From positions 1 through 64,000 of IMG/VR virus record IMGVR_UViG_3300022744_000020: 64,000 bases of DNA. One strand, written 5' to 3'. Of this stretch, positions 2,984-64,000 are shown in pieces (position 1 is the stretch's first letter; each line of letters opens with the position of its first letter). The notes under the pieces are model-generated. The model saw only the letters and a list, made by a program, of their open reading frames with translations, had not been told where the DNA came from and did not search any database. A program made the translations under genes and the position numbers.

Positions 2984-5900
2984 CACCCATTTCCATCCCG
3001 AGTCCTCCCGTCGTTTTTGAGCCGACTGAATTATCGGCCGTATTCGGAGAAGGAGAGTATCGGTTTGGTAGCAAGGAAGAAGTGCAGCAACACAAGCCCT
3101 TCTTCCAGCAGGATAAAAATCGTCCGGTTAACCGCGATTTCCTGCAGCGTCTGGAAAACCGATACGACGTCGTCGGAGACAACGGCATGCGCACACCCGG
3201 TCTGCGACAATACGAACTCAACCCAATCAGTCAAGCTACAGGACACTACTTCCCCAGAATAAATCACATCAACACCAAAGACTTCTTGGACCCCGACTCC
3301 ATTGTTCCGGGATCCTATCTGGACATGTCTTTCCAGTGCAATGCGGTGCTGGAAGATGAAAACATCAACATTCGAGATCACTTACCGCAGTTCATACAAA
3401 CGGACCTGACCCAGCACCCGCTGATTCAGCTTGCTGCCCACTACTGCAGCCAATACACACAACAGGTAGATTACGACAAAATCGTTCTGGCGGACAACAT
3501 TGCAAAGCGATGGACCGCTAATTTTGCCACGGCAGTGACGCGCTCGGCAGTATCCCGGTGGATGCAAATCCCTGAGAACTTCTTGCTGTTCAACCAAGTG
3601 GCCTACTGGTGTAGTATTTATTACTGCACGAAAAACGGAAAAGGAGATTTCCTCGCCCATTGCGACGATGCTGCGCTGTGGACCTACAAGCTGTTCGAAA
3701 AGATATTCCTTCAACAAAGCCCCCAAGTCTGCGAAATAATTCTTCGTAAAGATTTGGTGTACTACATCCGCAACTTTCAGGATTCAGTTAACGAACTAGG
3801 AACAATTCTCACCCACCTCAGCAAAATAATCCCGGAGGCTAACCAAGCTTTAACAAACCCAATTGAAATAAAGGTCAGACCGCATCTTTGCCCGAAAGAC
3901 TACGATCCGCATATTTACAACATGCTGGAGATGGTCAAAGAAGGCACCGTTGAGAAATACATCTCCAGCGATGATTGGACCCCAAAGAACTCTCAAGCAC
4001 AACTCGTTACCGTCTTACAGCAAGCCTTGGATCAGCGATACCGCTATCCAATTCCTCTGGACTATTTGTACTGGAAAAGAAAACTAGACGAACAAGAAAG
4101 CAGCGCAGTACAGGAATCTTTCGTTTGCAAAAACATCGAACCTAAAGGAGATGTAGACCCAGCTCTTCGATTCATTCAAACCGAACAGAACAATCTCATC
4201 CCAGGATATCCGGAACCCACTACCGCGCCTGGAAACTTCTTTGGTCATTGGCTACCTTACAAAGGAACTTACTTTTACGATCGTCTGGCTAACGCCTACA
4301 ACCCGGCTAATTGCTATAGCATCGTCTCGAGCAACGGAAGGATTTTTGACAGACACGGAAATGAATTAGAGTTCCATCGGATCGCACCAGAGCACTATCT
4401 GGCACGACTCCTGAATGGACAAAATAAGTTTTTGCCCATCATCATCGGGGGAGGACACCCCAACGATGGACAGACCTGCGAAAAACCACATCTTCCAAAC
4501 TACATTCCTGAGGAAAACAGCATGCATGGACTCACGCCATTCCACAACGGCAGCAACGGCTCTGGTTTTGGGCTCGTTCAACGCCCCACCCATCAACCTC
4601 TGATCCAAGGCAATGGCTTTGGAGTAGGTTCGCAACAAATTCAACAGCAGCAACAACCTGCCGCTGCGATGATTTACGGTTACGACGTTTCCGGAAATCG
4701 TCAACCCATCTCGATTGCTGAGGCTGCCCACGTGTGGCGTACCTCGAATGGCCAAGCGCAGTTCTATCACGAGAACAACGAGCCTGTGTCTTTTGGATAC
4801 AATGCTCAAGGTCAGGTCGTGATGGCCCAACCAGTCGCACGGGTGCAAAGCACCGTCGGCTTCGGACGCCCGAATGCCGCTTCGACTGTGGGGTTTGGTA
4901 CGGCGGCGAGTTCCTCGTTTGGCACCGCCACTGCGTTCAATCGCAGCACAGTTTCGGCCGCGATTCCCAACCACACTTTCCAAGTCGCGCAGGAAGGTGA
5001 CGGTCTTGGCAGTCGCAGGCTGGATCCTTCGAACCCCGCAAGCTTTGCACTCACCATGGGTCGCCGAGCTGCTGCAGCACGTGCCGCTCAAACACAGGAA
5101 GCCACTCCGGCGGCAGCCCCTCAAGCAACTCAGCAACACCGACCGTTGCCCAATACGGCCTCACTCGTGAGCAGTCTGGTAGCACGTCACCCGACGACGG
5201 CACTGCCGGCCGCGACTCCTGCTCCAGCGCCCCAGCCGGCACCCAAGCCGGCTGCCCAGCCTGCAAAAGAGATCGACGTGATGGCCGATCTGGATCTGGA
5301 TCGTCAAGCTTTCTACGTCAATGAAAGCGCACTCTACCATCCGGTTCTGGACAAGTCGCGTTTTCGTCTGGGCATCAAGGTCAAAGCAGGCGTGGCCAAG
5401 AAGATCATGGCCTATCCGTTGGATGCAGATGAGCAGGCTGACTGGCAGATCGAACACCCGTGGCATCGTCGTGGGGCTGGTGACGCGATCGCAGATTCTC
5501 TTCGCAAGTCTGGCATCGTCGGACTTCCCGACAAGGTTGTGGATGGTGAAGGGGTTTCGGAAGATACACCAGACTACTCCGGTCCTGGGGAAGAAGAAGC
5601 GGAGAACCAGCGCCTGGCTGAGGAGAAGGATGTTTCGCGAGACACTTCGGGCGCTGTGCTGTCCCAGACCACCATCGGCTCTTCCATCGACGACGTGTTT
5701 GCTCGGCTTGATCACAAGCTCAGTCGTTCCGGAACTAAGGAAGCCGGATTCATCGGAGCCGTCGGCGAAGTGTTCGACAAAATCAAGCCGGTCCTGCTTC
5801 GCTCGCGTACGGAATCGGACCTCCTGGGCACGTGGGCTCTGGCCAAGGACCTGAATCAGCTCGCTCAGCATCTCATGGTCAGCCGCCTGCGAATGAAGGA

Positions 5901-36114: not shown

Positions 36115-36792
36115 ATGGCTAGTCGTAAAGAAGTAGAGAAATTCATCCTGGACGAAACCGAAATGTGTCTTCCGGGTAGTAAAAATCGTCAAATGTACGA
36201 GGAGTTTTTCAAGAAACTCAGCGACGACGAATTCCGAGAACTGATGCAAAAATGCAAGGACGGTTATATCCTGCCGATCGTTTGTCCTAACCTTACCGGG
36301 CAAGATCTGGACATGAAGCGCTGGATTGAACAGGCGCGTCGTCTGGGCTATGAGTTCTTCCAACGCATTTGGATGCCTCCCAGCAAAGGTAAGCGGGGCT
36401 ATCTCACGCCTCAGAAGTACATGGTGATGCACACCATCACGCGGCGTCAGTCTCAGCATTTGACCAAGAAGATGAGTGCATCAGACGACACCGATTCGGT
36501 TGACCTCTACACCAACCAAGTGACTGGCGATTCGAAATCCTCACGGCTGTCTTATCCGGAGCTGACCACTCTGCGCGCCATGGGTCTGAAGGCATCTCTG
36601 GTGGAGCAGACGAAATACCGAGGTGGTGACGAGCGTGGATTCAATGCGTTCAATACGTCGATTGATCGTACGGGTACTGTCAGCATGGACAGCATCGAGA
36701 AGTTCAGCTCCGGGGTGAAGGTAGCCCAAACACTGTACATGTTGCTCAATGCCGCTCACCTGCAAAACAACTTCAACGAACAAGGCCGATGA
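36115..36792 (+). CDS. Virion RNA polymerase beta-like subunit, C-terminal part (phiKZ gp149 homologue)
   Basis: RRQSQHLTKK, NQVTGDSKSSRLSYPE (equivalent to QP.GG..GQRFGEME) and KYRGGD motifs. Confidence 0.85.
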   Translation: MASRKEVEKFILDETEMCLPGSKNRQMYEEFFKKLSDDEFRELMQKCKDGYILPIVCPNLTGQDLDMKRWIEQARRLGYEFFQRIWMPPSKGKRGYLTPQKYMVMHTITRRQSQHLTKKMSASDDTDSVDLYTNQVTGDSKSSRLSYPELTTLRAMGLKASLVEQTKYRGGDERGFNAFNTSIDRTGTVSMDSIEKFSSGVKVAQTLYMLLNAAHLQNNFNEQGR

Positions 36793-54063: not shown

Positions 54064-55698
54064 ATGCGTTTTAAACAATTCACCCCATTGAACTTGGGGA
54101 TTTTGATCATCGAAGACCGTATCGCCAAAGTGACCAAGCCTGTCACCAGTTTGGATGACTTCGATGGGATGACAAAGAATTTTCACAAAGACGGTTTGTT
54201 CTCCCAAGAAATTTTTGGATTGGTCGGCTCGGACATGCGATTCAAGAAGTATTCTTGGATCAACATGAAGGTTGGGGTTCTTCACCCTGAGGCTCATTCA
54301 TGTTTGGTAGCTTTGAAAGGACTCTACGGCGGAATTCTCCGGGGGTCCGATTACGCCATTTGGGACGAAGAGAAGAAGGACTTTTTCAAAAGCAATGCGC
54401 TGGAGGGTCAGACCGGATACCAGTTCTTCATTGACCACTGGAAGGACATCGTCTTTGAGCGGAACAAGTCGGTTCAGCGATCAGAAATGATTGACTTCTT
54501 GGAGAAGTACAAAAACCGATTGGTGTTGGATCGTCTGTTTGTCTTCGCCGCCGGCTACCGCGATCTGGAGACTGACGACACGGGTCGTGCTACTTCGGAT
54601 GACGTGAACAAACTCTACAAGAAGGTTCTGGCGATCTCGAATACCGTGGACCCCACGACTCTGGAGTACACGCCAAACGCCTACAACACTCAGCGCTTCT
54701 CGCTTCAATTGGCACTGAACGAGATTTACGAATACGTTTTCAACATTCTGGACGGTAAGAACGGAATGTTCATGGGCAAGTACGCTTCGCGTGCTCTGTC
54801 TTATGGCACACGAAACGTGATCACATCGCTGAAGTTGGACAACTCCAGGTTGGGGGCCAAGGGTAATGTTCGTGCCAACCATGCCGGCATCGGTATTTAC
54901 CAGTTGGCAAAGGCAATTGAGCCAGTTGCTATCTTCCATCTGAAGAACGGCTTCCTCTCCAAGGTCTTCACGTCGCAGACGAGTCCAGCGCTGCTTTGCA
55001 ATCCCAACACGATGCGCTCTGAGAGAGCCATGGTGGAGACGAAGGATTTTGATCGTTGGATGACCCGTCCTGGTTTGTCGGATGTTATCAACTACTACGC
55101 CAACCCTGGGGTTCGAAACAAGCCCATCATGGTGGGAAGTTATTACCTGGGTTTGATCTACCGGGGTCCGGATAAGACTTTCAAGTTACTCAGTGGCATT
55201 GACGAGCTGCCACGAGGGAGAAATCCGGAAGACTGTAGTCCCATCACCTACACGGATCTTCTCTACATCGCCTTGTACCGAAGAGCTGAGAAATACCCGC
55301 TCTTCGTGACTCGGTATCCGATTGACTCGGATCGCTCTACATTCCCAGCCAAGCCGTATCTTTTCTCCACCATTGAAACGGAAGTAAGAAAAGAGCTGGA
55401 TGATCAGTGGCAAGAACAGCCTCCTGAATTCACCGCATACCAGTTTCCAGTTTCGACCAGCGATACGTTCGGCTCGCTGGCTCCTCACCCTGGACGACTG
55501 GCAAAAATGAAAGCGGACTTTGACGGGGACATGTCCTCGGCAAATTCCGTAATGGCTGAAGAATCTATCGAGGATGTGGATTCTTTAATGAATAACAAAC
55601 GTTTCTACGTCGGGGCTGATGGGCAGTTTGTGATCAACTGCGCTACCGACACTGTGAAATATGTCCTGATGGCCATGACCCGAAAGGTTTCCCAATGA
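54064..55698 (+). CDS. Virion RNA polymerase beta-prime-like catalytic subunit (phiKZ gp180 homologue)
   Basis: ADFDGD catalytic motif, plus DGLFSQEIFG, GTRNVIT and TRYP. Confidence 0.92.
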   Translation: MRFKQFTPLNLGILIIEDRIAKVTKPVTSLDDFDGMTKNFHKDGLFSQEIFGLVGSDMRFKKYSWINMKVGVLHPEAHSCLVALKGLYGGILRGSDYAIWDEEKKDFFKSNALEGQTGYQFFIDHWKDIVFERNKSVQRSEMIDFLEKYKNRLVLDRLFVFAAGYRDLETDDTGRATSDDVNKLYKKVLAISNTVDPTTLEYTPNAYNTQRFSLQLALNEIYEYVFNILDGKNGMFMGKYASRALSYGTRNVITSLKLDNSRLGAKGNVRANHAGIGIYQLAKAIEPVAIFHLKNGFLSKVFTSQTSPALLCNPNTMRSERAMVETKDFDRWMTRPGLSDVINYYANPGVRNKPIMVGSYYLGLIYRGPDKTFKLLSGIDELPRGRNPEDCSPITYTDLLYIALYRRAEKYPLFVTRYPIDSDRSTFPAKPYLFSTIETEVRKELDDQWQEQPPEFTAYQFPVSTSDTFGSLAPHPGRLAKMKADFDGDMSSANSVMAEESIEDVDSLMNNKRFYVGADGQFVINCATDTVKYVLMAMTRKVSQ

Positions 55699-58600
55699 GC
55701 ATGAATTTTGACATCTGGCTGCGCAAGTTTGCAGCCCATGAACTCTCTCAGGTCGTTACCCCGAAGCTGAGAACCCTCAACGATTGGGAGTTCCCGCAAT
55801 CGTCGGTTTATCACTATCAGCTTGCGGATGGAATCGAGATGGGTCCAGGACCTGACGATATCTACGTCCGAAAGATTGAGCGCGCCATCCTCTTCCAGAA
55901 CGTCACGAAGCTCAGTCGTCTGGAAGGTAATCCGAGATTCAGTGCCGGGTTGGAAACCAACATCATCAAGGCTTATCGCGCCAGTAATAAACGCGTGAGA
56001 CCTTTGGCTACTTTGGCTTCTGCGGTATCCGACACCCAGTCTCTGCTGCTGATTAACTACGCGCCGCTGGGGAAAACCTATCGGTACGTGAAGAATGTTT
56101 TCACCGTTTATCACAAGTGGCTGAACTCTTTCTCCACCACGGTGGATGAAATCGTTAAAGCCTGCGAGGTGTTGCCGCATCATGCGCATTTCCTCTTTGC
56201 TGGAACGCCAACGCTGATCCCCAGCGTTTCTCAGTACGAAAGTGCTGAGAAGAATTTCGTGCAGAACGATCTGAAGTTCTTCATCGGTCGAGATGCGTTC
56301 TTGTCGCTGGAATTCTGGAAGTGGCTGTCATCGAATCGTCAGGCAAGCATTCTGGCGAAGATCCCCAAGAATCACCTGAAGAAAGTGAACATCGTCTACC
56401 AAGAAACGGGTAAATGGGTTTGCTTGAACCTGGGTTATCTGGACAGTTTCCGGAATCCTCAAGCAAACGATCCATGGGCTGGGATGGAGTCGGGAGTTGC
56501 CAAGCCTGATAGCAGCCTTTCCCCGGAGCAGATTCAAAAGCGCTATCTTCGTTTCCTGATGACTCTCATGCAAGAGAGAACGGTCACGGCCAACACCGAA
56601 GACGAAGACGATAAAGCCGATGATGCACGCATCGGGCAAATCGAGAAAGGCGCACCTGAAATCAAGAAAGAGGATCAGCAAGCTGACGGTGGTGATGACG
56701 TTGGTCTTACGCCGGAACAAGTGGCTGCAAAGATCCAGGCTGAGGATGCAGAGATCGATCACGACTTGGCTCAGCTCAACGAAATACTCTCGAAAAATTA
56801 CAACAAGCAAACGGAGAGTGTTGCCGAGATCCTACAGGCACCAATGTCGGAGATAGAAGCCAACACGATCGACAGATGCCAACGACTGGCGGAAGATGGT
56901 CTGCTGACCGCCAAGGAGATGGCGCGCTTCAAGAAACTCTCCACGTCATACAAGTCTTTACCGAGCCCTTATGGTGACGGCACCATTGAGCAAAGCATCG
57001 ATTTGTCGGATCCTGAGCTGACTAAGCTCAAAGTGCAGGAGATCATCAAGACTCCCACGGTTCACGACGAGTCGATGCTGAAATCCAGTCTGACGACATT
57101 CGATCTGGATTATCAAAAGAAAACGCTCAACAAGCACACCGTTGCCTGCGTGATGGCCGCTCAACGAGCAGGTGGTGCGATCACCGCCTACGAAGTTGAT
57201 AAGGTCGAAAACATCCTTGGCGCTTACGAAGTACACAGCGTCAAGTACGTTCCGATCGAAGGAGCCCCGAGCACTTGGAAATTCAAACGACCTGTTCTGA
57301 ATGATGATGGCACGTTCACTTCGAATGGAACTCGGTATCGCTTGAGAAAGCAGCGTATCGATCTTCCGATTCGCAAAATTTCACCGAAGGAAGTTTTGCT
57401 GACAAGCTATTTCGGTAAAGTCAAGGTACTCAGATCGCGCAAGCGACAACACGACTTTGGCGAATGGCTGGCTGATCGTGTCATGAATGACGCGATGACC
57501 AAACGCAATCCGCTCATCACCAGTGTGTCGATGAGCGACAGCTTTGATTCAGAGCTGAAGGCGCCTCGAGCCTACACCAGCCTGTCCATGAATTATCGGT
57601 TCATTGACACGCCTCAATGGAGGCTGATGTTTGACCAGGAAGAAGTTCTCAAAGCAGTGGATCCTGCTGTGACGAACGCGGCACGGTCCTTGGGGAATTT
57701 GGTCATCTCCTACAGAGAAGATGGCGGGTACCTCATGCTTGACTCGCATGGTGCCGTGCATGAAGTCCTTCCGGACCAACCAGTCAAGGTACTCACGAGT
57801 CTGGAGGAGTTTCTCGGAATCCCGGTACATGAAGCTCCGATTGATTTTGCTGAGGTGAAGATCTACGGCAAAGAAATCCCGGTGGGTCTGATCCTGTCTT
57901 ATTACAAGGGACTGAGCAATCTGCTGAACATTCTGGGCATTCAGTACCGAAGAGAGCAAACGGGCACACGAACGACGGCGAATCTGGGCGAGTGGGCCCT
58001 CACCTTTGCAGATGAGCGCCTTGTCTTCTCCAGAGACGATAAGTTTGCTTGTCTGGTTTTGGGTGGGTTCCGAGATTACCAAAAGATCCTCACGCTTTAT
58101 TCGGTCTACTCTTTCGATCAGCGGGGAGTCTACCTGAATGTGCTGGAATCGGCAAAGCTGGGCGTTCGCTATCTGAGGGAGATGGGTTTGATGAACGACA
58201 TGTTCGTTGATCCCATCACGCTTGAGATCCTGAAGAAGATGAAGGAGCCCCAGAAGTTTGAAGGGCTCCTGCTGCGCGCATGTGAACTTCTCCTCAGCGA
58301 CAGCCACCCGAAGGAAATCGATCCTGACTTCATGCGCATTCGAGGGAACGAACGATTCGCTGGTGTCATCTACACCGAAATCGTGGCCAGCCTTCGTGCG
58401 CACAACGCTCAGATTGGGAAGTCTGGCAAGCGCGTAGAAATGCATCCGTTTGCTATCGATAAGCGAATCAGTGAAGATTCGTCTAAGATGCAATGCGACG
58501 AGCTGAATCCCATTCAAGCGCTGAAAGAAATCGAAGCTGTTACCTACACGGGTGAGGGTGGTAGATCTATCCGCTCGATGACGAAGAAGACCCGAGGCTA

Positions 58601-58799
58601 CCACAAGAACGATCGGGATCTGATTTCTGAAGCGACGGTGGATAGCTCGATGGTGGCTATCAATGTCTATACCAGTGCGAATCCAAAGCTGGAAGACCTC
58701 AGCGGAAATGCCGAGAAACGAGTAGGCACTGAGAAATCGACACCGGGATCCATGCTTTCTACGTCGGCTCTACTCGCACCCGCGTGTGACCGTGACGAT
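55695..58799 (+). CDS. Virion RNA polymerase beta-like subunit (phiKZ gp178 homologue), exon 1
   Basis: DLPIRKI, TYTGEGGRS and ISEATVDS motifs. Ends STSALLAPACDRDD, where an intron begins; unspliced, it stops at TAA 58800-58802. Confidence 0.88.
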
Positions 58800-59185
58800 T
58801 AAGTCGTACTGAATAGGTGCGATATGGTCACCCTTGACGGTAACGTCTCGTGGTAATCCTCTTGAACTGCGGGGACCCCCTTAGAGCCTTGTGTACCAAG
58901 TGCGGTCCGTAATGATCGCATGGCCGTTCTAACCAAACGGGTATGGTAAAAAGCACAAGGATTGGGAAATCGCGCATCCAAGCTTCCCACTTACCGATGA
59001 GTCGGTAAAGGAAGAAGGTTCAACGACTAGGGCCTTGTCAGCCCGTACCTACCAAGCGGTGGGGAAGTAGGAGGCTCCAGAAGAGATTCTGGATGCAGAT
59101 ATAGTCTGTTCTGCATCGAAAGGTGCAGCAGTCCAGCTAAACGTAAGCTGGACGGTCTGGATTAGCGTCCCAGATGAACATAAAG
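58800..59185 (+). ncRNA. Group I self-splicing intron (IA-like, 386 nt, no homing endonuclease ORF)
   Basis: 5' exon ends in U. P1 is ACGAU|UAA-GUCGU with a U-G wobble at the splice site. P7 is GACUA (59025-29) / UAGUC (59102-06), with P7.1 and P7.2 stems, GNRA-capped P8 and P9, and a terminal G. Removal restores DRDD-PKRINF in frame. Confidence 0.9.
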
Positions 59186-60304
59186 CCAAAGCGAATAAAT
59201 TTTATTTCAATCCAACAAGGCCATACCGTTCCCTGTGCTGGATACCATGCACCGGTGATGAGAACTGGTTATGAAGCGGTCATCGCTCATCGTACCACGG
59301 ATACCTTTGCCTATACGGCTAAAAAACCTGGAAAGGTCTTGAAGGTAAATCCGAAGGGGATCATCATCGAGTACGAAGACGGTGAGCGCGTTGGGTTGCG
59401 CTTGGGTAGACGGTTCGGTCTGGCCTCTGGCATGACGGTTCCGCACGATGTCGTCACGTTCCAAAAAGAAGGTGCGACTTTCCAAGTCGGAGATTGCATC
59501 TCTTACAACGAAGGATTTTTCGAGCGAGACATCTTCAGCCCGAATTGCGTGGTGATGAAGAACTCCCTGGTGTGTCGTGCGGTGATCATGGAGTCTTCGG
59601 ATACGCTGGAAGACTCCTCAACCATCTCCCCTAAGTTGGCAAAGAAGTTGTCGACAAAGGTGACGCACACCATCACCAAGGTGGTCCGGTTCGATCAAAC
59701 AGTCACCAACGTTCTGGAAGAAGGTCAAGCGGTTAGTTTTGACACGGTGCTGTGCTATATCCAGTCCGACGCCTCGGCAAACTCGGCTGCGTTCTCTGAC
59801 GAAACACTGGAAACGCTTGAGGCCCTGGATACTGGAACCCCGAGGGCTCGGGTAGATGGGGTGGTGGATGCCGTCGAGGTTTACTACCATGGCGAGCTGT
59901 TGGATATGAATGAGTCGCTTCAGATCCTGGCAAAGCAAAGCAACGAGAGACTCAAGAAAAAAGCCGAACAATCGGAAACCACAGCATTCACAGGACAAGT
60001 GGATGGAGGCTTCCGCATTCAAGGCACGCCAATGCCGATTGAGAACGTGGCGATTCGCTTCTACATCACCAGCGACACCCCCGCCGGTGTCGGGGATAAG
60101 GGTGTGGTTGCGAACCAGATGAAGACAGTCCACGGAGCGATAATGGATGGGGTTTACAGAAGCGAAGACGGTCAAGAAATTGATTTGATTTTCGGCGCTC
60201 AATCGTTCGATGCTCGGATTGTGAATTCGCCGTACATCCTCGGTATGGTCACCACGGTGCGCCAACTCACCTCCAAGAGAGCCGCAGAGATGTATTTCTC
60301 ATGA
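59186..60304 (+). CDS. Virion RNA polymerase beta-like subunit (gp178 homologue), exon 2
   Basis: PKRINFISIQQGH (equivalent to RpoB NRALM..MQRQ), RTGYE, EDSS.IS and GDKGVVANQMKTV motifs. Confidence 0.88.
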   Translation, partial: PKRINFISIQQGHTVPCAGYHAPVMRTGYEAVIAHRTTDTFAYTAKKPGKVLKVNPKGIIIEYEDGERVGLRLGRRFGLASGMTVPHDVVTFQKEGATFQVGDCISYNEGFFERDIFSPNCVVMKNSLVCRAVIMESSDTLEDSSTISPKLAKKLSTKVTHTITKVVRFDQTVTNVLEEGQAVSFDTVLCYIQSDASANSAAFSDETLETLEALDTGTPRARVDGVVDAVEVYYHGELLDMNESLQILAKQSNERLKKKAEQSETTAFTGQVDGGFRIQGTPMPIENVAIRFYITSDTPAGVGDKGVVANQMKTVHGAIMDGVYRSEDGQEIDLIFGAQSFDARIVNSPYILGMVTTVRQLTSKRAAEMYFS

Positions 60305-62963: not shown

Positions 62964-63761
62964 ATGGTAATAACAAGGCCACTTGGTGCTGCGAAGCCCC
63001 AGAAAACCTTATTCTCTTGCACGGCACTACCGGCAAACAAAGCCGGTATTCTCAAAAAGGACGAGTTCGGTTATTTCGAGATTCCCATCGGGGGATTGAA
63101 TTGCTTTAATTCTGCGGGTCATTGGTACACCGCCGATCAAACTGCTGAGCTGTTCGCTAAGAGCTCCCACCTGAATCGAAGAATCGAAGACGGCAGACTC
63201 TTTGCAGAGGCGGGCCATCCGAAGCGCCTTCCCGGTCAGTCTGAAGACGACTATATCCAGCGCATCCTCACCATTGAGGAATCTATGGTGGCTGGACATT
63301 GGGCCAGCATCCGATTGGACTATGACTCCATCAAGGATGAAAGAGGCCGTCCGGTTGTGGCCATGATCGGCAAGGTCAAAGGTGAGGGGAAATTCGGTCC
63401 GGCACTTGAAAGTAGTTTGCTCAATCCCAAGATCAACACCGCGTTTTCGATTCGGTCTTTCACTGAGGACAGTTTTGTCGCAGGTGTTAGAAACCGAATT
63501 ATCCGTCAGATCATCACGTGGGACTGGGTCATCGAGCCGGGTATCTCGTTTGCGGGCAAATACAACAGCCCGTCTCTGGAGGGTCGCCGACTGGCGGTCG
63601 ATCTGGAGTCTGCTGAAATGACCCGTGAGGTCATTCAGCGAGCCATGCGCAAGCCTGTGTTGGCTGGCATGGAGTCCTGCCGTCTGATGGGCGTGGAGCT
63701 GTTCCAGCAGCTTGGTTGGAACATGGACGTGGGCGATCTTCCAAGTTACGCCAAGTGGTGA
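62964..63761 (+). CDS. Prohead (head maturation) protease (phiKZ gp175 homologue)
   Basis: G.LFAEAGHP (catalytic His), AFSIRS (catalytic Ser) and TWDWVIEPGI. AAGGA ribosome-binding site before ATG 62964. Confidence 0.85.
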   Translation: MVITRPLGAAKPQKTLFSCTALPANKAGILKKDEFGYFEIPIGGLNCFNSAGHWYTADQTAELFAKSSHLNRRIEDGRLFAEAGHPKRLPGQSEDDYIQRILTIEESMVAGHWASIRLDYDSIKDERGRPVVAMIGKVKGEGKFGPALESSLLNPKINTAFSIRSFTEDSFVAGVRNRIIRQIITWDWVIEPGISFAGKYNSPSLEGRRLAVDLESAEMTREVIQRAMRKPVLAGMESCRLMGVELFQQLGWNMDVGDLPSYAKW

Positions 63762-63780
63762 TGGCCAAAAAATAAACCAG

Positions 63781-63815
63781 AGGTATCTGGCTCCCACAAA
63801 GGGAGCCAGATACCT
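63781..63815. terminator. Bidirectional hairpin terminator
   Basis: 15-bp stem AGGTATCTGGCTCCC/GGGAGCCAGATACCT. Confidence 0.72.
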
Positions 63816-64000
63816 TACTTTGATCGTCCGGTGCTTACGCGCTCCCATGGACCAGAGCTGCTTTTGTTGGTGAACCAAATGCAAAATCCGATGACAAGCG
63901 AAGCCACACCAATTAAGACCAGAAGAAGAAAAACCAAATAAATCTCAAGTTCGTTCAATGGCTGCACAGTCGACTCCAGGTAGAGAAAATAAAGAACTAA
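63815..64000 (-). CDS. 3' end of a small membrane protein (partial, start outside the window)
   Basis: Open frame on the minus strand reading ...IYLVFLLLVLIGVASLVIGFCIWF...GRSK*, ending at the hairpin. Not in the supplied ORF track. Confidence 0.55.
   Translation of the reverse strand, partial: LVLYFLYLESTVQPLNELEIYLVFLLLVLIGVASLVIGFCIWFTNKSSSGPWERVSTGRSK

What the first reader, a model, noticed from the sequence alone, without database searches (positions are those of the whole stretch)
58800..59185. Endonuclease-free group I intron splitting the virion RNAP beta gene
Seen: a complete ribozyme core comprising P1 with a U-G pair, a GUAA-capped P2, P3, a branched P5 extension, P7 GACUA/UAGUC, P7.1 and P7.2, P8 (GAGA loop), P9 (GAAA loop), P9.1, P9.2 and a terminal G. 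Excision joins 1035 + 372 aa into a 1407-aa subunit at DRDD|PKRINF. There is no ORF inside, and no free-standing nuclease gene between the overlapping gp180- and gp178-like genes. Established: phiPA3 carries an intron with endonuclease gp210 in its gp178 homologue, and gp210 cuts the intronless phiKZ gene. Inference: this minimal intron may sit at the same site, giving immunity to competitors' endonucleases or being mobilised in trans. ORF callers would wrongly report two genes.
Basis: partly seen in the sequence, partly recalled or inferred. Interest (0 to 1): 0.8.

Follow-up and report, generated by a model that had tools for sequence, protein, structure and literature searches.

The report
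Self-splicing intron in phage polymerase gene
A 386-base self-splicing (group I) intron with no endonuclease gene interrupts the virion RNA polymerase beta gene of an uncultured phiKZ-like jumbo phage, at the same codon boundary as the "weaponised" PhiPA3 gp210 intron; it is real, but it is one ordinary member of a large intron family that commonly occupies this site.

Summary
Rfam's group I model matches 58798-59128 (57.9 bits, E 4e-12), the only RNA-family match in the window. Removing 58800-59185 joins 1035 and 372 residues with no gap against the phiKZ gp178 family profile (profile positions 1050|1051). The site, directly after the second conserved Asp, is the same as that of the PhiPA3 gp210 intron and of the already annotated ORF-less intron of 201phi2-1 gp273/274.

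Of 80 related IMG/VR loci, 26 carry an intron here or 12 nt downstream. About half of these have a gp210-like HNH gene and half have none. The ribozymes are homologous and show strong covariation.

In relatives that carry the endonuclease, the ORF lies in the loop of an extended P1. In this intron that loop is five bases.

One public library assembled as RNA-seq holds a contig of a 96% relative that skips exactly 58800-59185. This is either spliced RNA or an intron-less DNA allele. Two metatranscriptomes hold intron-only contigs.

Immunity to endonucleases and mobilisation in trans remain untested. No gp210-like gene was detected in this genome.

Verdict: new member of a known kind, modest interest.

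The parts
54064..55698 (+). phiKZ gp180-like virion RNAP subunit gene. It overlaps the next gene by 4 nt.
   Evidence: PHROG 2986, E 1e-180; ORF list.
55695..58799 (+). Exon 1 of the gp178-like virion RNAP beta gene (1035 codons, ending ...LSTSALLAPACDRDD).
   Evidence: PHROG 3148 positions 5-1050, E 2e-286; alignment with phiKZ, PhiPA3 and RP12.
58800..59185 (+). Group I intron, 386 nt, with no endonuclease ORF. It begins with the in-frame stop UAA and ends with the terminal G at 59185.
   Evidence: Rfam RF00028, 57.9 bits; a contig in run X2 skips exactly this stretch; no ORF inside.
58797..58829 (+). Extended P1 hairpin. Exon bases G-A-U (58797-99) pair with G-U-C (58827-29), with U58799.G58827 at the splice site. 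The helix continues as 58800-58810 paired with 58816-58826. Loop L1 is GAAUA (58811-58815), the position where relatives carry the HNH ORF.
   Evidence: Pairs checked. The same helix is found with unrelated sequences in L050, L080, L036, L031, L082, L027 and L088.
58830..58854 (+). P2 hairpin capped by a GUAA tetraloop (58840-58843).
   Evidence: GNRA-capped P2 is seen in family members (alignment A2).
58858..58863 (+). P3 5' strand (pairs with 59069-59074).
   Evidence: All 6 pairs covary across the 14 introns.
58868..58976 (+). P4 (58868-73 / 58970-76) and P5 (58878-80 / 58964-66), enclosing a branched P5abc-like extension. The extension has P5a (58887-98 / 58944-60) with an AAAAA bulge at 58948-52, P5b (58901-07 / 58914-20) and P5c (58924-28 / 58936-40).
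   Evidence: Rfam alignment, MFE fold, RNAalifold covariation. The extension is shared with L050, L080, L031, L082, L036, L088 and L051.
58978..59018 (+). P6, P6a and P6b (58978-79/59017-18; 58983-87/59010-14; 58991-97/59002-08, with a UGAG loop).
59023..59029 (+). P7 5' strand (A, bulged C, then GACUA). It pairs with 59102-59107 (UAGUCU) and forms the guanosine-binding helix.
   Evidence: Invariant in all 14 aligned introns; Rfam alignment.
59030..59063 (+). P7.1 (59030-33/59041-44) and P7.2 (59048-53/59058-63).
   Evidence: Every P7.1 pair shows compensatory changes in 6-8 of the 14 introns.
59069..59074 (+). P3 3' strand.
59076..59093 (+). P8, 7 bp with a GAGA loop.
59102..59107 (+). P7 3' strand.
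59111..59175 (+). P9 (59111-17/59122-28, GAAA loop), P9.1 (59133-38/59146-51) and P9.2 (59155-60/59170-75).
   Evidence: family alignment.
59186..60304 (+). Exon 2 (372 codons plus stop, beginning PKRINFISIQQ). ORF callers start it at the in-frame ATG at 59174, which lies inside the intron.
   Evidence: PHROG 3148 positions 1051-1420, E 1e-136.

Best explanation
The stretch 58800-59185 is a functional, self-splicing group I intron of the IA type, which has P7.1 and P7.2. It sits in the essential virion RNA polymerase beta gene (phiKZ gp178 homologue) of an uncultured phiKZ-like jumbo phage, IMG/VR contig 3300022744_000020 (270 kb, freshwater). The primary transcript folds so that the last three exon bases (GAU) pair with GUC in a long P1. 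Guanosine bound in P7 attacks after U58799, and the freed exon then attacks after G59185. This joins GAC GAT to CCA AAG and restores a 1407-aa subunit. The intron belongs to the same homologous family as the PhiPA3 gp210 intron and occupies the same site, but it has no HNH homing endonuclease. In its relatives that gene lies in the loop of P1. Here the loop is 5 nt, which fits the endonuclease-lost stage of the usual homing cycle of invasion, fixation, endonuclease decay and eventual intron loss. Because it splits the sequence that gp210 recognises, it probably also makes this allele a poor substrate for gp210-type nickases. That would be a by-product and is not shown. Shown here: sequence, structure, covariation, exact site, family membership, and the existence of the precisely intron-less form. 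Inferred: catalysis in vivo, past loss of the ORF, and immunity.
For: - Rfam full-length hit above the gathering score.
- Exact seam on PHROG 3148 at positions 1050|1051.
- Intron-less homologues such as RP12 are contiguous at this point.
- Same site as PhiPA3 gp211/gp209 and phiKZ D1072 (PMC11620839).
- Same site as the annotated ORF-less intron of 201phi2-1, for which splicing reads and proteomic support are reported (PMC11512511).
- In a 14-intron alignment, the P7 strands and the J8/7 linker (the segment between P8 and the P7 3' strand) are invariant, and 35 of 47 predicted pairs show compensatory double changes.
- The extended P1 keeps its pairing with unrelated sequences in 8 introns, and the HNH ORFs lie inside its loop.
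- MFE z-score -5.27.
- Run X2 holds an 812-nt contig of a ~96% relative lying on 58233-58799 and then 59186-59430, with a joint skipping exactly 386 nt and no ambiguity in its position.
- Metatranscriptome X14 holds a 348-nt contig lying wholly inside the intron at depth 91, with exon depth 0. X23 holds a 184-nt intron-only contig.
- The 7 substitutions listed for the X14 variant are all neutral to the structure: G.U to A-U, C-G to U.G and A-U to G.U in stems, and 4 in loops (with the helices).
Against: - Splicing of this particular intron has not been observed. The X2 library may contain DNA, and a sister library from the same study is flagged as probably DNA. The exact joint may therefore be an intron-less DNA allele rather than spliced RNA.
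- Only 3 exon bases pair in P1, and no convincing P10 was found (1 bp). This is short, although other small group I introns manage with as little (my own knowledge, not tested here).
- The Rfam score (57.9) is lower than for some relatives (87 for 201phi2-1). This is largely because of the 100-nt P5 insertion.
- Loss of an ORF, as opposed to never having had one, cannot be told from one sequence.
Confidence: 0.9

Rival explanations
1. The ORF-less intron is kept by selection as an immunity allele. By occupying the Asp-Asp site it protects the essential vRNAP gene from gp210-type nicking endonucleases of co-infecting jumbo phages.
For: - gp210 nicks intron-less PhiPA3 and phiKZ alleles, and phiKZ escape mutations lie 2-3 nt upstream of the insertion point. 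Recognition therefore spans the site that the intron splits (PMC11620839).
- gp210-like HNH genes are common at this site in relatives: 13 HNH-carrying introns among 80 loci (10 at this site, 3 at the site 12 nt downstream), 27-63% identical to one another.
- ORF-less introns are about as frequent as ORF-bearing ones.
Against: - No cleavage test has been done on any allele that contains an intron.
- The same pattern is expected from the neutral homing cycle.
- Occupancy is scattered on the gene tree almost as randomly as shuffled labels (19 changes against a shuffled mean of 21.9). This indicates rapid turnover, not stable retention.
- For related I-HmuI-type nickases, recognition lies largely in the downstream exon and intron-bearing alleles can still be cut (my recollection of the SPO1/SP82 literature, not checked here).
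Confidence: 0.25
2. The intron never carried an endonuclease in this lineage. It arrived, and can still move, through an endonuclease supplied in trans, either by a co-infecting phage or from elsewhere in the genome. Plain recombination with an occupied allele would also do.
For: - Run X2 holds a contig identical to 58817-59030 whose upstream 66 nt are unlike the window. The break falls exactly at the L1 / P1 3'-strand boundary, where relatives hold the ORF. A variant of this very intron with an insert in L1 may therefore circulate.
- The natural pair L046 and L047 shows recent homing at this site, with a one-sided co-conversion gradient.
Against: - No gp210-like gene was found in the 64-kb window (best tblastn E 0.004) or on the source contig in a pattern-limited IMG/VR scan.
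- The loose-end sequence was not found in IMG/VR or in the window.
- The closest ribozyme relatives include both ORF-bearing and ORF-less introns at about 75% identity, so the direction of change cannot be resolved.
Confidence: 0.15
3. The element is a dead intron relic. The gene is really expressed as two polypeptides, 1035 aa and 376 aa (from the ATG at 59174), as some jumbo-phage RNAP subunits are naturally split.
For: - An in-frame ATG lies 12 nt before exon 2.
- Jumbo-phage RNAP genes are split in several places (PMC7598289).
Against: - All core positions that are invariant in the family are intact, and all helices pair.
- The split would fall inside a contiguous conserved motif...DD|PKRINFISIQQ, that is unbroken in 54 of 80 relatives.
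- No Shine-Dalgarno-like sequence precedes 59174.
- Natural variants of the intron conserve its structure.
Confidence: 0.04

Closest known systems
Group I intron of Pseudomonas phage 201phi2-1 gp273/274 (virion RNAP beta)
   Same: - Same gene.
- Same insertion point, after the second conserved Asp (...AHDD|MKRIGF).
- No ORF (336 nt).
- Homologous ribozyme with P7.1/P7.2, P9.1 and P9.2.
- Splicing is supported by proteomics and by two long reads (PMC11512511).
   Different: - 201phi2-1 lacks the whole P5 extension.
- Its core is only about 58% matched to ours.
- Its exon 2 starts with ATG instead of CCA.
- The host genes are about 39% identical.
PhiPA3 gp210 mobile intron in gp211/gp209 (Birkholz et al. 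2024, Science; PMC11620839)
   Same: Same gene, same phase-0 site and the same ribozyme family.
   Different: - PhiPA3 carries a 330-aa HNH/NUMOD nicking endonuclease in the P1 loop (1352 nt in all).
- It has a shorter P5 extension.
- Ours has a 5-nt loop there and no endonuclease.
Uncultured chimallivirus introns at the same site (IMG/VR loci L050, L080, L031, L082, L036, L088, L051)
   Same: - Closest ribozymes, about 75% identity over aligned core columns.
- Same branched P5abc-like extension.
- Same extended P1.
- Same conserved 3' tail, GAACAUAAAG-like.
   Different: L031, L082, L036, L088 and L051 carry gp210-like HNH genes. L050 keeps about 40 nt of extra L1. None is a close relative; the exons are 45-49% identical at the protein level.
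Other jumbo-phage RNAP introns: phiKZ gp179 intron in gp180, and the five introns of Bacillus phage AR9 g189
   Same: Group I introns in virion RNAP genes. One AR9 intron gave the best nucleotide match in the isolate collection, about 70% over 175 nt.
   Different: They sit at different sites. The nearest AR9 intron is about 10 codons downstream of the Asp-Asp site, and the phiKZ one is in the neighbouring gene.

Membership tests
Group I catalytic intron (Rfam RF00028) | Full-length covariance-model match at or above the curated gathering score. | tested here: met
   57.9 bits against GA 50, model positions 1-253, E 4.2e-12.
Group I catalytic intron (Rfam RF00028) | The 5' splice site follows a U that forms a U.G wobble in P1 with the internal guide sequence. 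| tested here: met
   U58799.G58827 lies within G-A-U / G-U-C, and the helix is extended by 10 further pairs. The same arrangement is kept with different sequences in 7 other introns.
Group I catalytic intron (Rfam RF00028) | The intron ends in G (omega G), and its removal restores the reading frame. | tested here: met
   G59185. The junction GAC GAT|CCA AAG matches phiKZ ...HDD|PKRINF and PHROG 3148 positions 1050|1051.
Group I catalytic intron (Rfam RF00028) | Conserved core of P3-P8 with the P3/P7 pseudoknot and the guanosine-binding P7. | tested here: met
   P3, P4, P5, P6, P7 and P8 were located and pair correctly. The P7 strands are invariant in the family alignment. 35 of 47 predicted pairs are compensatory.
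Group I catalytic intron (Rfam RF00028) | Guanosine-dependent self-splicing. | not testable with these tools
   Needs in vitro transcription and a GTP/Mg2+ assay.
Group I catalytic intron (Rfam RF00028) | The spliced junction is present in RNA. | tested here: inconclusive
   An exact 386-nt skip is seen in one contig of run X2, which is labelled RNA-seq, but the library may hold DNA. Intron-only contigs occur in two true metatranscriptomes.
Subgroup IA architecture | Extra helices P7.1 and P7.2 between P7 and P3'. | tested here: met
   59030-44 and 59048-63, with covariation at every P7.1 pair. The assignment of this feature to subgroup IA rests on my knowledge of the Michel-Westhof classification.
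gp210-type mobile intron of chimallivirus vRNAP beta | Insertion directly after the second conserved Asp codon of the gp178 homologue. | tested here: met
   PMC11620839.
gp210-type mobile intron of chimallivirus vRNAP beta | Ribozyme homologous to that of the PhiPA3 intron. | tested here: met
   It aligns throughout with PhiPA3 and 12 others, sharing P7.1/7.2, P9.1/9.2 and the 3' tail. 190 of 272 aligned columns are identical to PhiPA3.
gp210-type mobile intron of chimallivirus vRNAP beta | Encodes an HNH (HNH_3 + NUMOD) homing endonuclease. | tested here: not met
   No + strand ORF longer than 21 aa in the intron. No tblastn match of 13 family endonucleases in the window. This is therefore an endonuclease-less relative, not a complete mobile intron.

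The most novel reading that the evidence does not exclude
The Asp-Asp site of the virion RNAP beta gene may be a battleground across the whole family. Two insertion points 12 nt apart are hit repeatedly by gp210-type endonuclease introns, and ORF-less introns such as this one persist because they 'vaccinate' the essential gene against those nickases, not merely as decaying relics. Under this reading the PhiPA3/phiKZ interference competition would be a general feature of nucleus-forming phages, and this freshwater phage would carry a defensive allele.
Probability: 0.2. Interest if true: 0.6.

Novelty: new member of a known kind. Interest (0 to 1): 0.3.

Why it matters
For annotation, the two ORFs (1035 aa and 376 aa) should be merged into one 1407-aa vRNAP beta subunit.

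For biology, the single case adds little. An ORF-less intron at this exact site has been annotated in 201phi2-1 since that genome was published, and the endonuclease-bearing version in PhiPA3 has been studied in depth.

The survey prompted by the finding is more useful.
- About a third of the sampled chimallivirus loci have this hotspot occupied.
- Versions with and without the endonuclease are about equally common.
- The endonuclease gene always lies in the P1 loop.
- There are tandem introns separated by a 12-nt micro-exon.
- A natural pair of near-identical phages differs by the intron and shows a co-conversion-like gradient.

Together these suggest that the intron-mediated competition shown for PhiPA3 and phiKZ is widespread in nature, and they supply material to test it.

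Tried and rejected
- **Close relatives in the isolate-phage collection.** Megablast of the locus found nothing. blastn of the intron found only partial matches of about 70% to other group I introns.
- **AR9 intron at the same site.** I suspected that the best nucleotide match, an AR9 g189 intron, sat at the same site. Rejected: the AR9 sequence ...HADPPRVGMQTTQQ is unbroken at the Asp site, and its nearest intron lies about 10 codons downstream.
- **First P1 model.** My first model paired the exon bases ACGAU with GUCGU (58803-07), leaving a 3-nt loop. Rejected: the other family members have no such guide. The extended P1 with GAU/GUC fits all of them.
- **P10.** Only one possible pair with exon 2 was found, so I make no claim for it.
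- **Exact 35-mer of the intron.** It was found in IMG/VR and in JGI metagenomes only on the source contig.
- **Foreign upstream flank in run X2.** Its 30-nt consensus was not found in IMG/VR or in the window.
- **gp210-like endonuclease genes.** None in the window, and none on the source contig in a pattern-limited scan. A weak hit at 63690-63878 (E 0.004) crosses a stop codon and was dismissed.
- **Analyses left out.** I did not run the count of structure pairs with a hand-written pseudoknotted structure, because that needs a 475-character string typed into the call. I did not build a covariance model, because alignment A2 exceeds the 400-column limit. The covariation evidence therefore rests on RNAalifold and on duplex folding of P1.

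Full report
**What is at the coordinates.**
The ORF at 55695-58802 (1035 aa) ends in TAA. A second ORF, 59174-60304 (376 aa), follows in another frame. Rfam's group I intron model matches 58798-59128 over its full length at 57.9 bits (gathering score 50, E 4e-12). It is the only RNA-family match in the window, even at E<=1. The 1035-aa piece matches PHROG 3148 (RNAP beta, 1424 positions) over positions 5-1050. The piece translated from 59186 matches positions 1051-1420. Removing 58800-59185 therefore joins ...CDRDD to PKRINFISIQQ... with no residue lost or gained and gives a 1407-aa protein. The upstream gene (54064-55698) is the gp180-like subunit (PHROG 2986) and overlaps exon 1 by 4 nt. The downstream genes have no nuclease signature. 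Inside the intron no + strand ORF exceeds 21 aa. The window is the first 64 kb of IMG/VR contig 3300022744_000020, a 270-kb freshwater contig. Its closest cultured relatives are Ralstonia jumbo phages such as RP12, at about 51% protein identity. In those phages the gene is contiguous across this point.

**Structure.**
- P2 is capped by GUAA.
- P3 is 58858-63 / 59069-74, and P4, P5 and P6/6a/6b are all in place.
- The P5 extension is branched and resembles P5abc, with a five-A bulge.
- P7 is GACUA/UAGUC with a bulged C.
- P7.1 and P7.2 are present.
- P8 has a GAGA loop and P9 a GAAA loop.
- P9.1, P9.2 and the terminal G59185 complete the structure.

The MFE of the whole element is 5.3 standard deviations below that of shuffles. 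My first reading of P1, a 5-bp guide three bases into the intron, did not hold in the relatives. The model that fits every family member is a long P1. In it the last three exon bases (GAU) pair with GUC at 58827-29, with U58799.G58827 at the cleavage site. The helix then continues into the intron (58800-10 paired with 58816-26) and closes on the pentaloop GAAUA. I found no convincing P10.

**The insertion site.**
phiKZ gp178 reads ...TEHDD(1072)|PKRINFISIQQ. PhiPA3 gp211 ends ...SMNDD, followed by the intron that carries gp210, and exon 2 (gp209) begins MKRVGFISIQQ. Birkholz et al. state that the PhiPA3 intron lies immediately after the two conserved aspartates. They also report that phiKZ escape mutations fall in the D1072 codon, 2-3 nt upstream of the site (PMC11620839). 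The 201phi2-1 homologue gp273/274 is already annotated as a joined CDS 'interrupted by a mobile...' element. Its insertion is a 336-nt ORF-less group I intron (Rfam 87 bits) at ...AHDD|MKRIGF. A 2024 transcriptome paper reports two reads spliced exactly there, together with earlier proteomic support (PMC11512511). An endonuclease-free intron at this site is therefore not new.

**How common the site is.**
I aligned seven exon-2 homologues (A1) and fetched 80 IMG/VR loci with the alignment. I then located the exon-1 tail and the exon-2 head in each.
- 54 loci are contiguous across the site.
- 26 loci (about 22 distinct sequences) carry an insertion.
- 17 of the 26 have it directly after the Asp-Asp codons (site A). 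Of these, 6 including ours are ORF-less (336-400 nt), 10 are 1.1-1.5 kb with an ORF of 249-345 aa, and 1 (L060, 666 nt) is the tandem pair of introns described below.
- 9 of the 26 have it 12 nt further on, after PKRV (site B). These also occur with and without an ORF.

Rfam confirms a group I intron in 13 of 19 insertion loci tested, in addition to ours, PhiPA3 and 201phi2-1. The ORFs are mutually homologous to PhiPA3 gp210 (27-63% identity) and match Pfam HNH_3 with NUMOD-type DNA-binding modules. On a tree of the flanking exon protein, occupancy needs at least 19 changes, 15 of them forced by well-supported branches. Label shuffling gives a mean of 21.9, so the intron is scattered almost at random. 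This was a FastTree run and our row has a long branch, so I use the tree only for the count.

**Homology and covariation.**
The 3' cores of 14 site-A introns align throughout (A2). Shared features are an invariant GUUCAACGACUA ... AGAUAUAGUCU, P7.1/P7.2, P9.1/P9.2 and a conserved 3' tail. RNAalifold finds 47 pairs, and 35 of them show compensatory double changes. Our core is closest to L050 (ORF-less) and to L031 and L082 (both with HNH), at about 75% identity over aligned columns. It shares the branched P5 extension with them. PhiPA3 has a shorter extension and 201phi2-1 has none.

Duplex folding of the first 14 intron bases against the region before P2 recovers the extended P1 in L050, L080, L036, L031, L082, L027 and L088. 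The sequences are entirely different but the pairing is kept. In the HNH-bearing introns the 3' strand of P1 lies at or just after the end of the ORF. In L036, for example, the ORF spans nt 68-1069 and the 3' strand spans nt 1070-1088. The endonuclease gene is therefore a passenger in loop L1, and ours has that loop reduced to five bases.

**Evidence from public reads.**
- **Run X2.** This is a wastewater library labelled RNA-seq cDNA. One 812-nt contig, about 96% identical to the window, lies on 58233-58799 and continues at 59186-59430. The joint skips exactly 386 nt, with 245 nt on the shorter side and no positional ambiguity. This proves that the precisely intron-less form exists. It does not show whether that form is spliced RNA or the DNA of an intron-less relative, because the library may contain DNA and a sister run is flagged as probably DNA.
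- **Run X14.** This is a true freshwater metatranscriptome. It holds one 348-nt contig, at depth 91, that lies entirely inside the intron (58826-59173). Exon depth is 0.
- **Run X23.** It holds a 184-nt intron-only contig identical to the window.

The intron-only contigs fit accumulation of excised intron RNA. Related introns in other genomes could contribute as well. The seven substitutions listed for the X14 variant are three in stems that keep pairing (58905, 58907, 59051) and four in loops (58998, 58999, 59001, 59054).

**Function.**
The best-supported reading is an ordinary self-splicing intron at the endonuclease-lost stage of the homing cycle. gp210 recognition evidently spans the insertion point, so an occupied site should be a poor substrate. 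No intron-containing allele has been tested, however, and the near-random phylogenetic scatter indicates turnover, not stable retention. For mobilisation in trans I found no gp210-like gene in the window or on the source contig (a pattern-limited scan). One lead remains. Run X2 holds a contig identical to 58817-59030 whose preceding 66 nt differ from the window, and the break falls exactly at the edge of L1. That could be a version of this same intron with an insert in L1. I could not recover it.

**Verdict.**
The observation and the main interpretation are correct. The element is a new member of a known and, as it turns out, common kind. Recent reviews of these phages discuss the PhiPA3 case and do not report a survey of this site. 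The survey is the modestly new part.

Noticed in passing
L060:1823-2498: Both insertion points are occupied in tandem. The order is ...GAT GAT | intron A (about 338 nt) | the 12-nt micro-exon CCAAAACGAGTA (PKRV) | intron B (about 326 nt) | AAT TTT.... Rfam finds two separate group I hits (1822-2113 and 2161-2447). L076 shows the same pattern, with an HNH-bearing first intron.
   Followed up: partly
L046 vs L047 (IMG/VR 3300024312_000005 and 3300024282_000001): These two phage contigs are near-identical and differ by a 1306-nt HNH-bearing intron at the Asp-Asp site. The 3610 nt downstream are 100% identical. The 1194 nt upstream have 8 mismatches, at -4, -7, -30, -48, -70, -109, -377 and -517, which become denser towards the site. 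This looks like a one-sided co-conversion tract from a recent homing event.
   Followed up: partly
window:58817-59030 (run X2, record 12): A contig is identical to this part of the intron, but the 66 nt upstream of 58817 are unlike the window. The break coincides with the L1 / P1 3'-strand boundary, where relatives carry the endonuclease ORF. The foreign flank was not found in IMG/VR or in the window.
   Followed up: partly
window:59097-59131: The P7 3' strand plus the P9 hairpin is covered at depth 89-281 in runs X2 and X12 by contigs with unrelated flanks on both sides. Other abundant group I introns in those samples probably share this conserved segment.
   Followed up: no
L060, L080, L082, L083 at about 3350-3720: A further group I intron (Rfam 57-102 bits) lies about 300 codons into the exon-2 region in several relatives. 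This is a third intron site in the same gene, and it is empty in our phage.
   Followed up: no
L004:36170-36718 (phiKZ NC_004629): phiKZ gp180 is split by a group I intron that carries gp179. Residues 486-544 of our gp180-like protein match 36170-36346, downstream of the Rfam hit at 36397-36718, yet the RefSeq record annotates gp180 as ending before gp179. The literature already mentions introns at gp179 and gp180 (PMC11512511, citing Ceyssens 2014).
   Followed up: partly
L001:5950-6255 (PhiPA3 HQ630627 about 74.6-74.9 kb): PhiPA3 has a second group I intron (Rfam 71.7 bits) between gp085 and gp084, the phiKZ gp082 homologue. The record annotates it as 'none'. It gave one of the best nucleotide matches to our intron core (72% over 127 nt).
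   Followed up: no
L002 (Bacillus phage AR9 g189): The AR9 virion RNAP beta gene is annotated as six joined pieces, and five group I hits fall within it. None is at the Asp-Asp site; the nearest starts about 10 codons downstream.
   Followed up: partly
window:58799-58990 (- strand): A 63-aa GTG ORF and three shorter ORFs lie antisense to the intron. They overlap the ribozyme core and are most likely chance ORFs.
   Followed up: no
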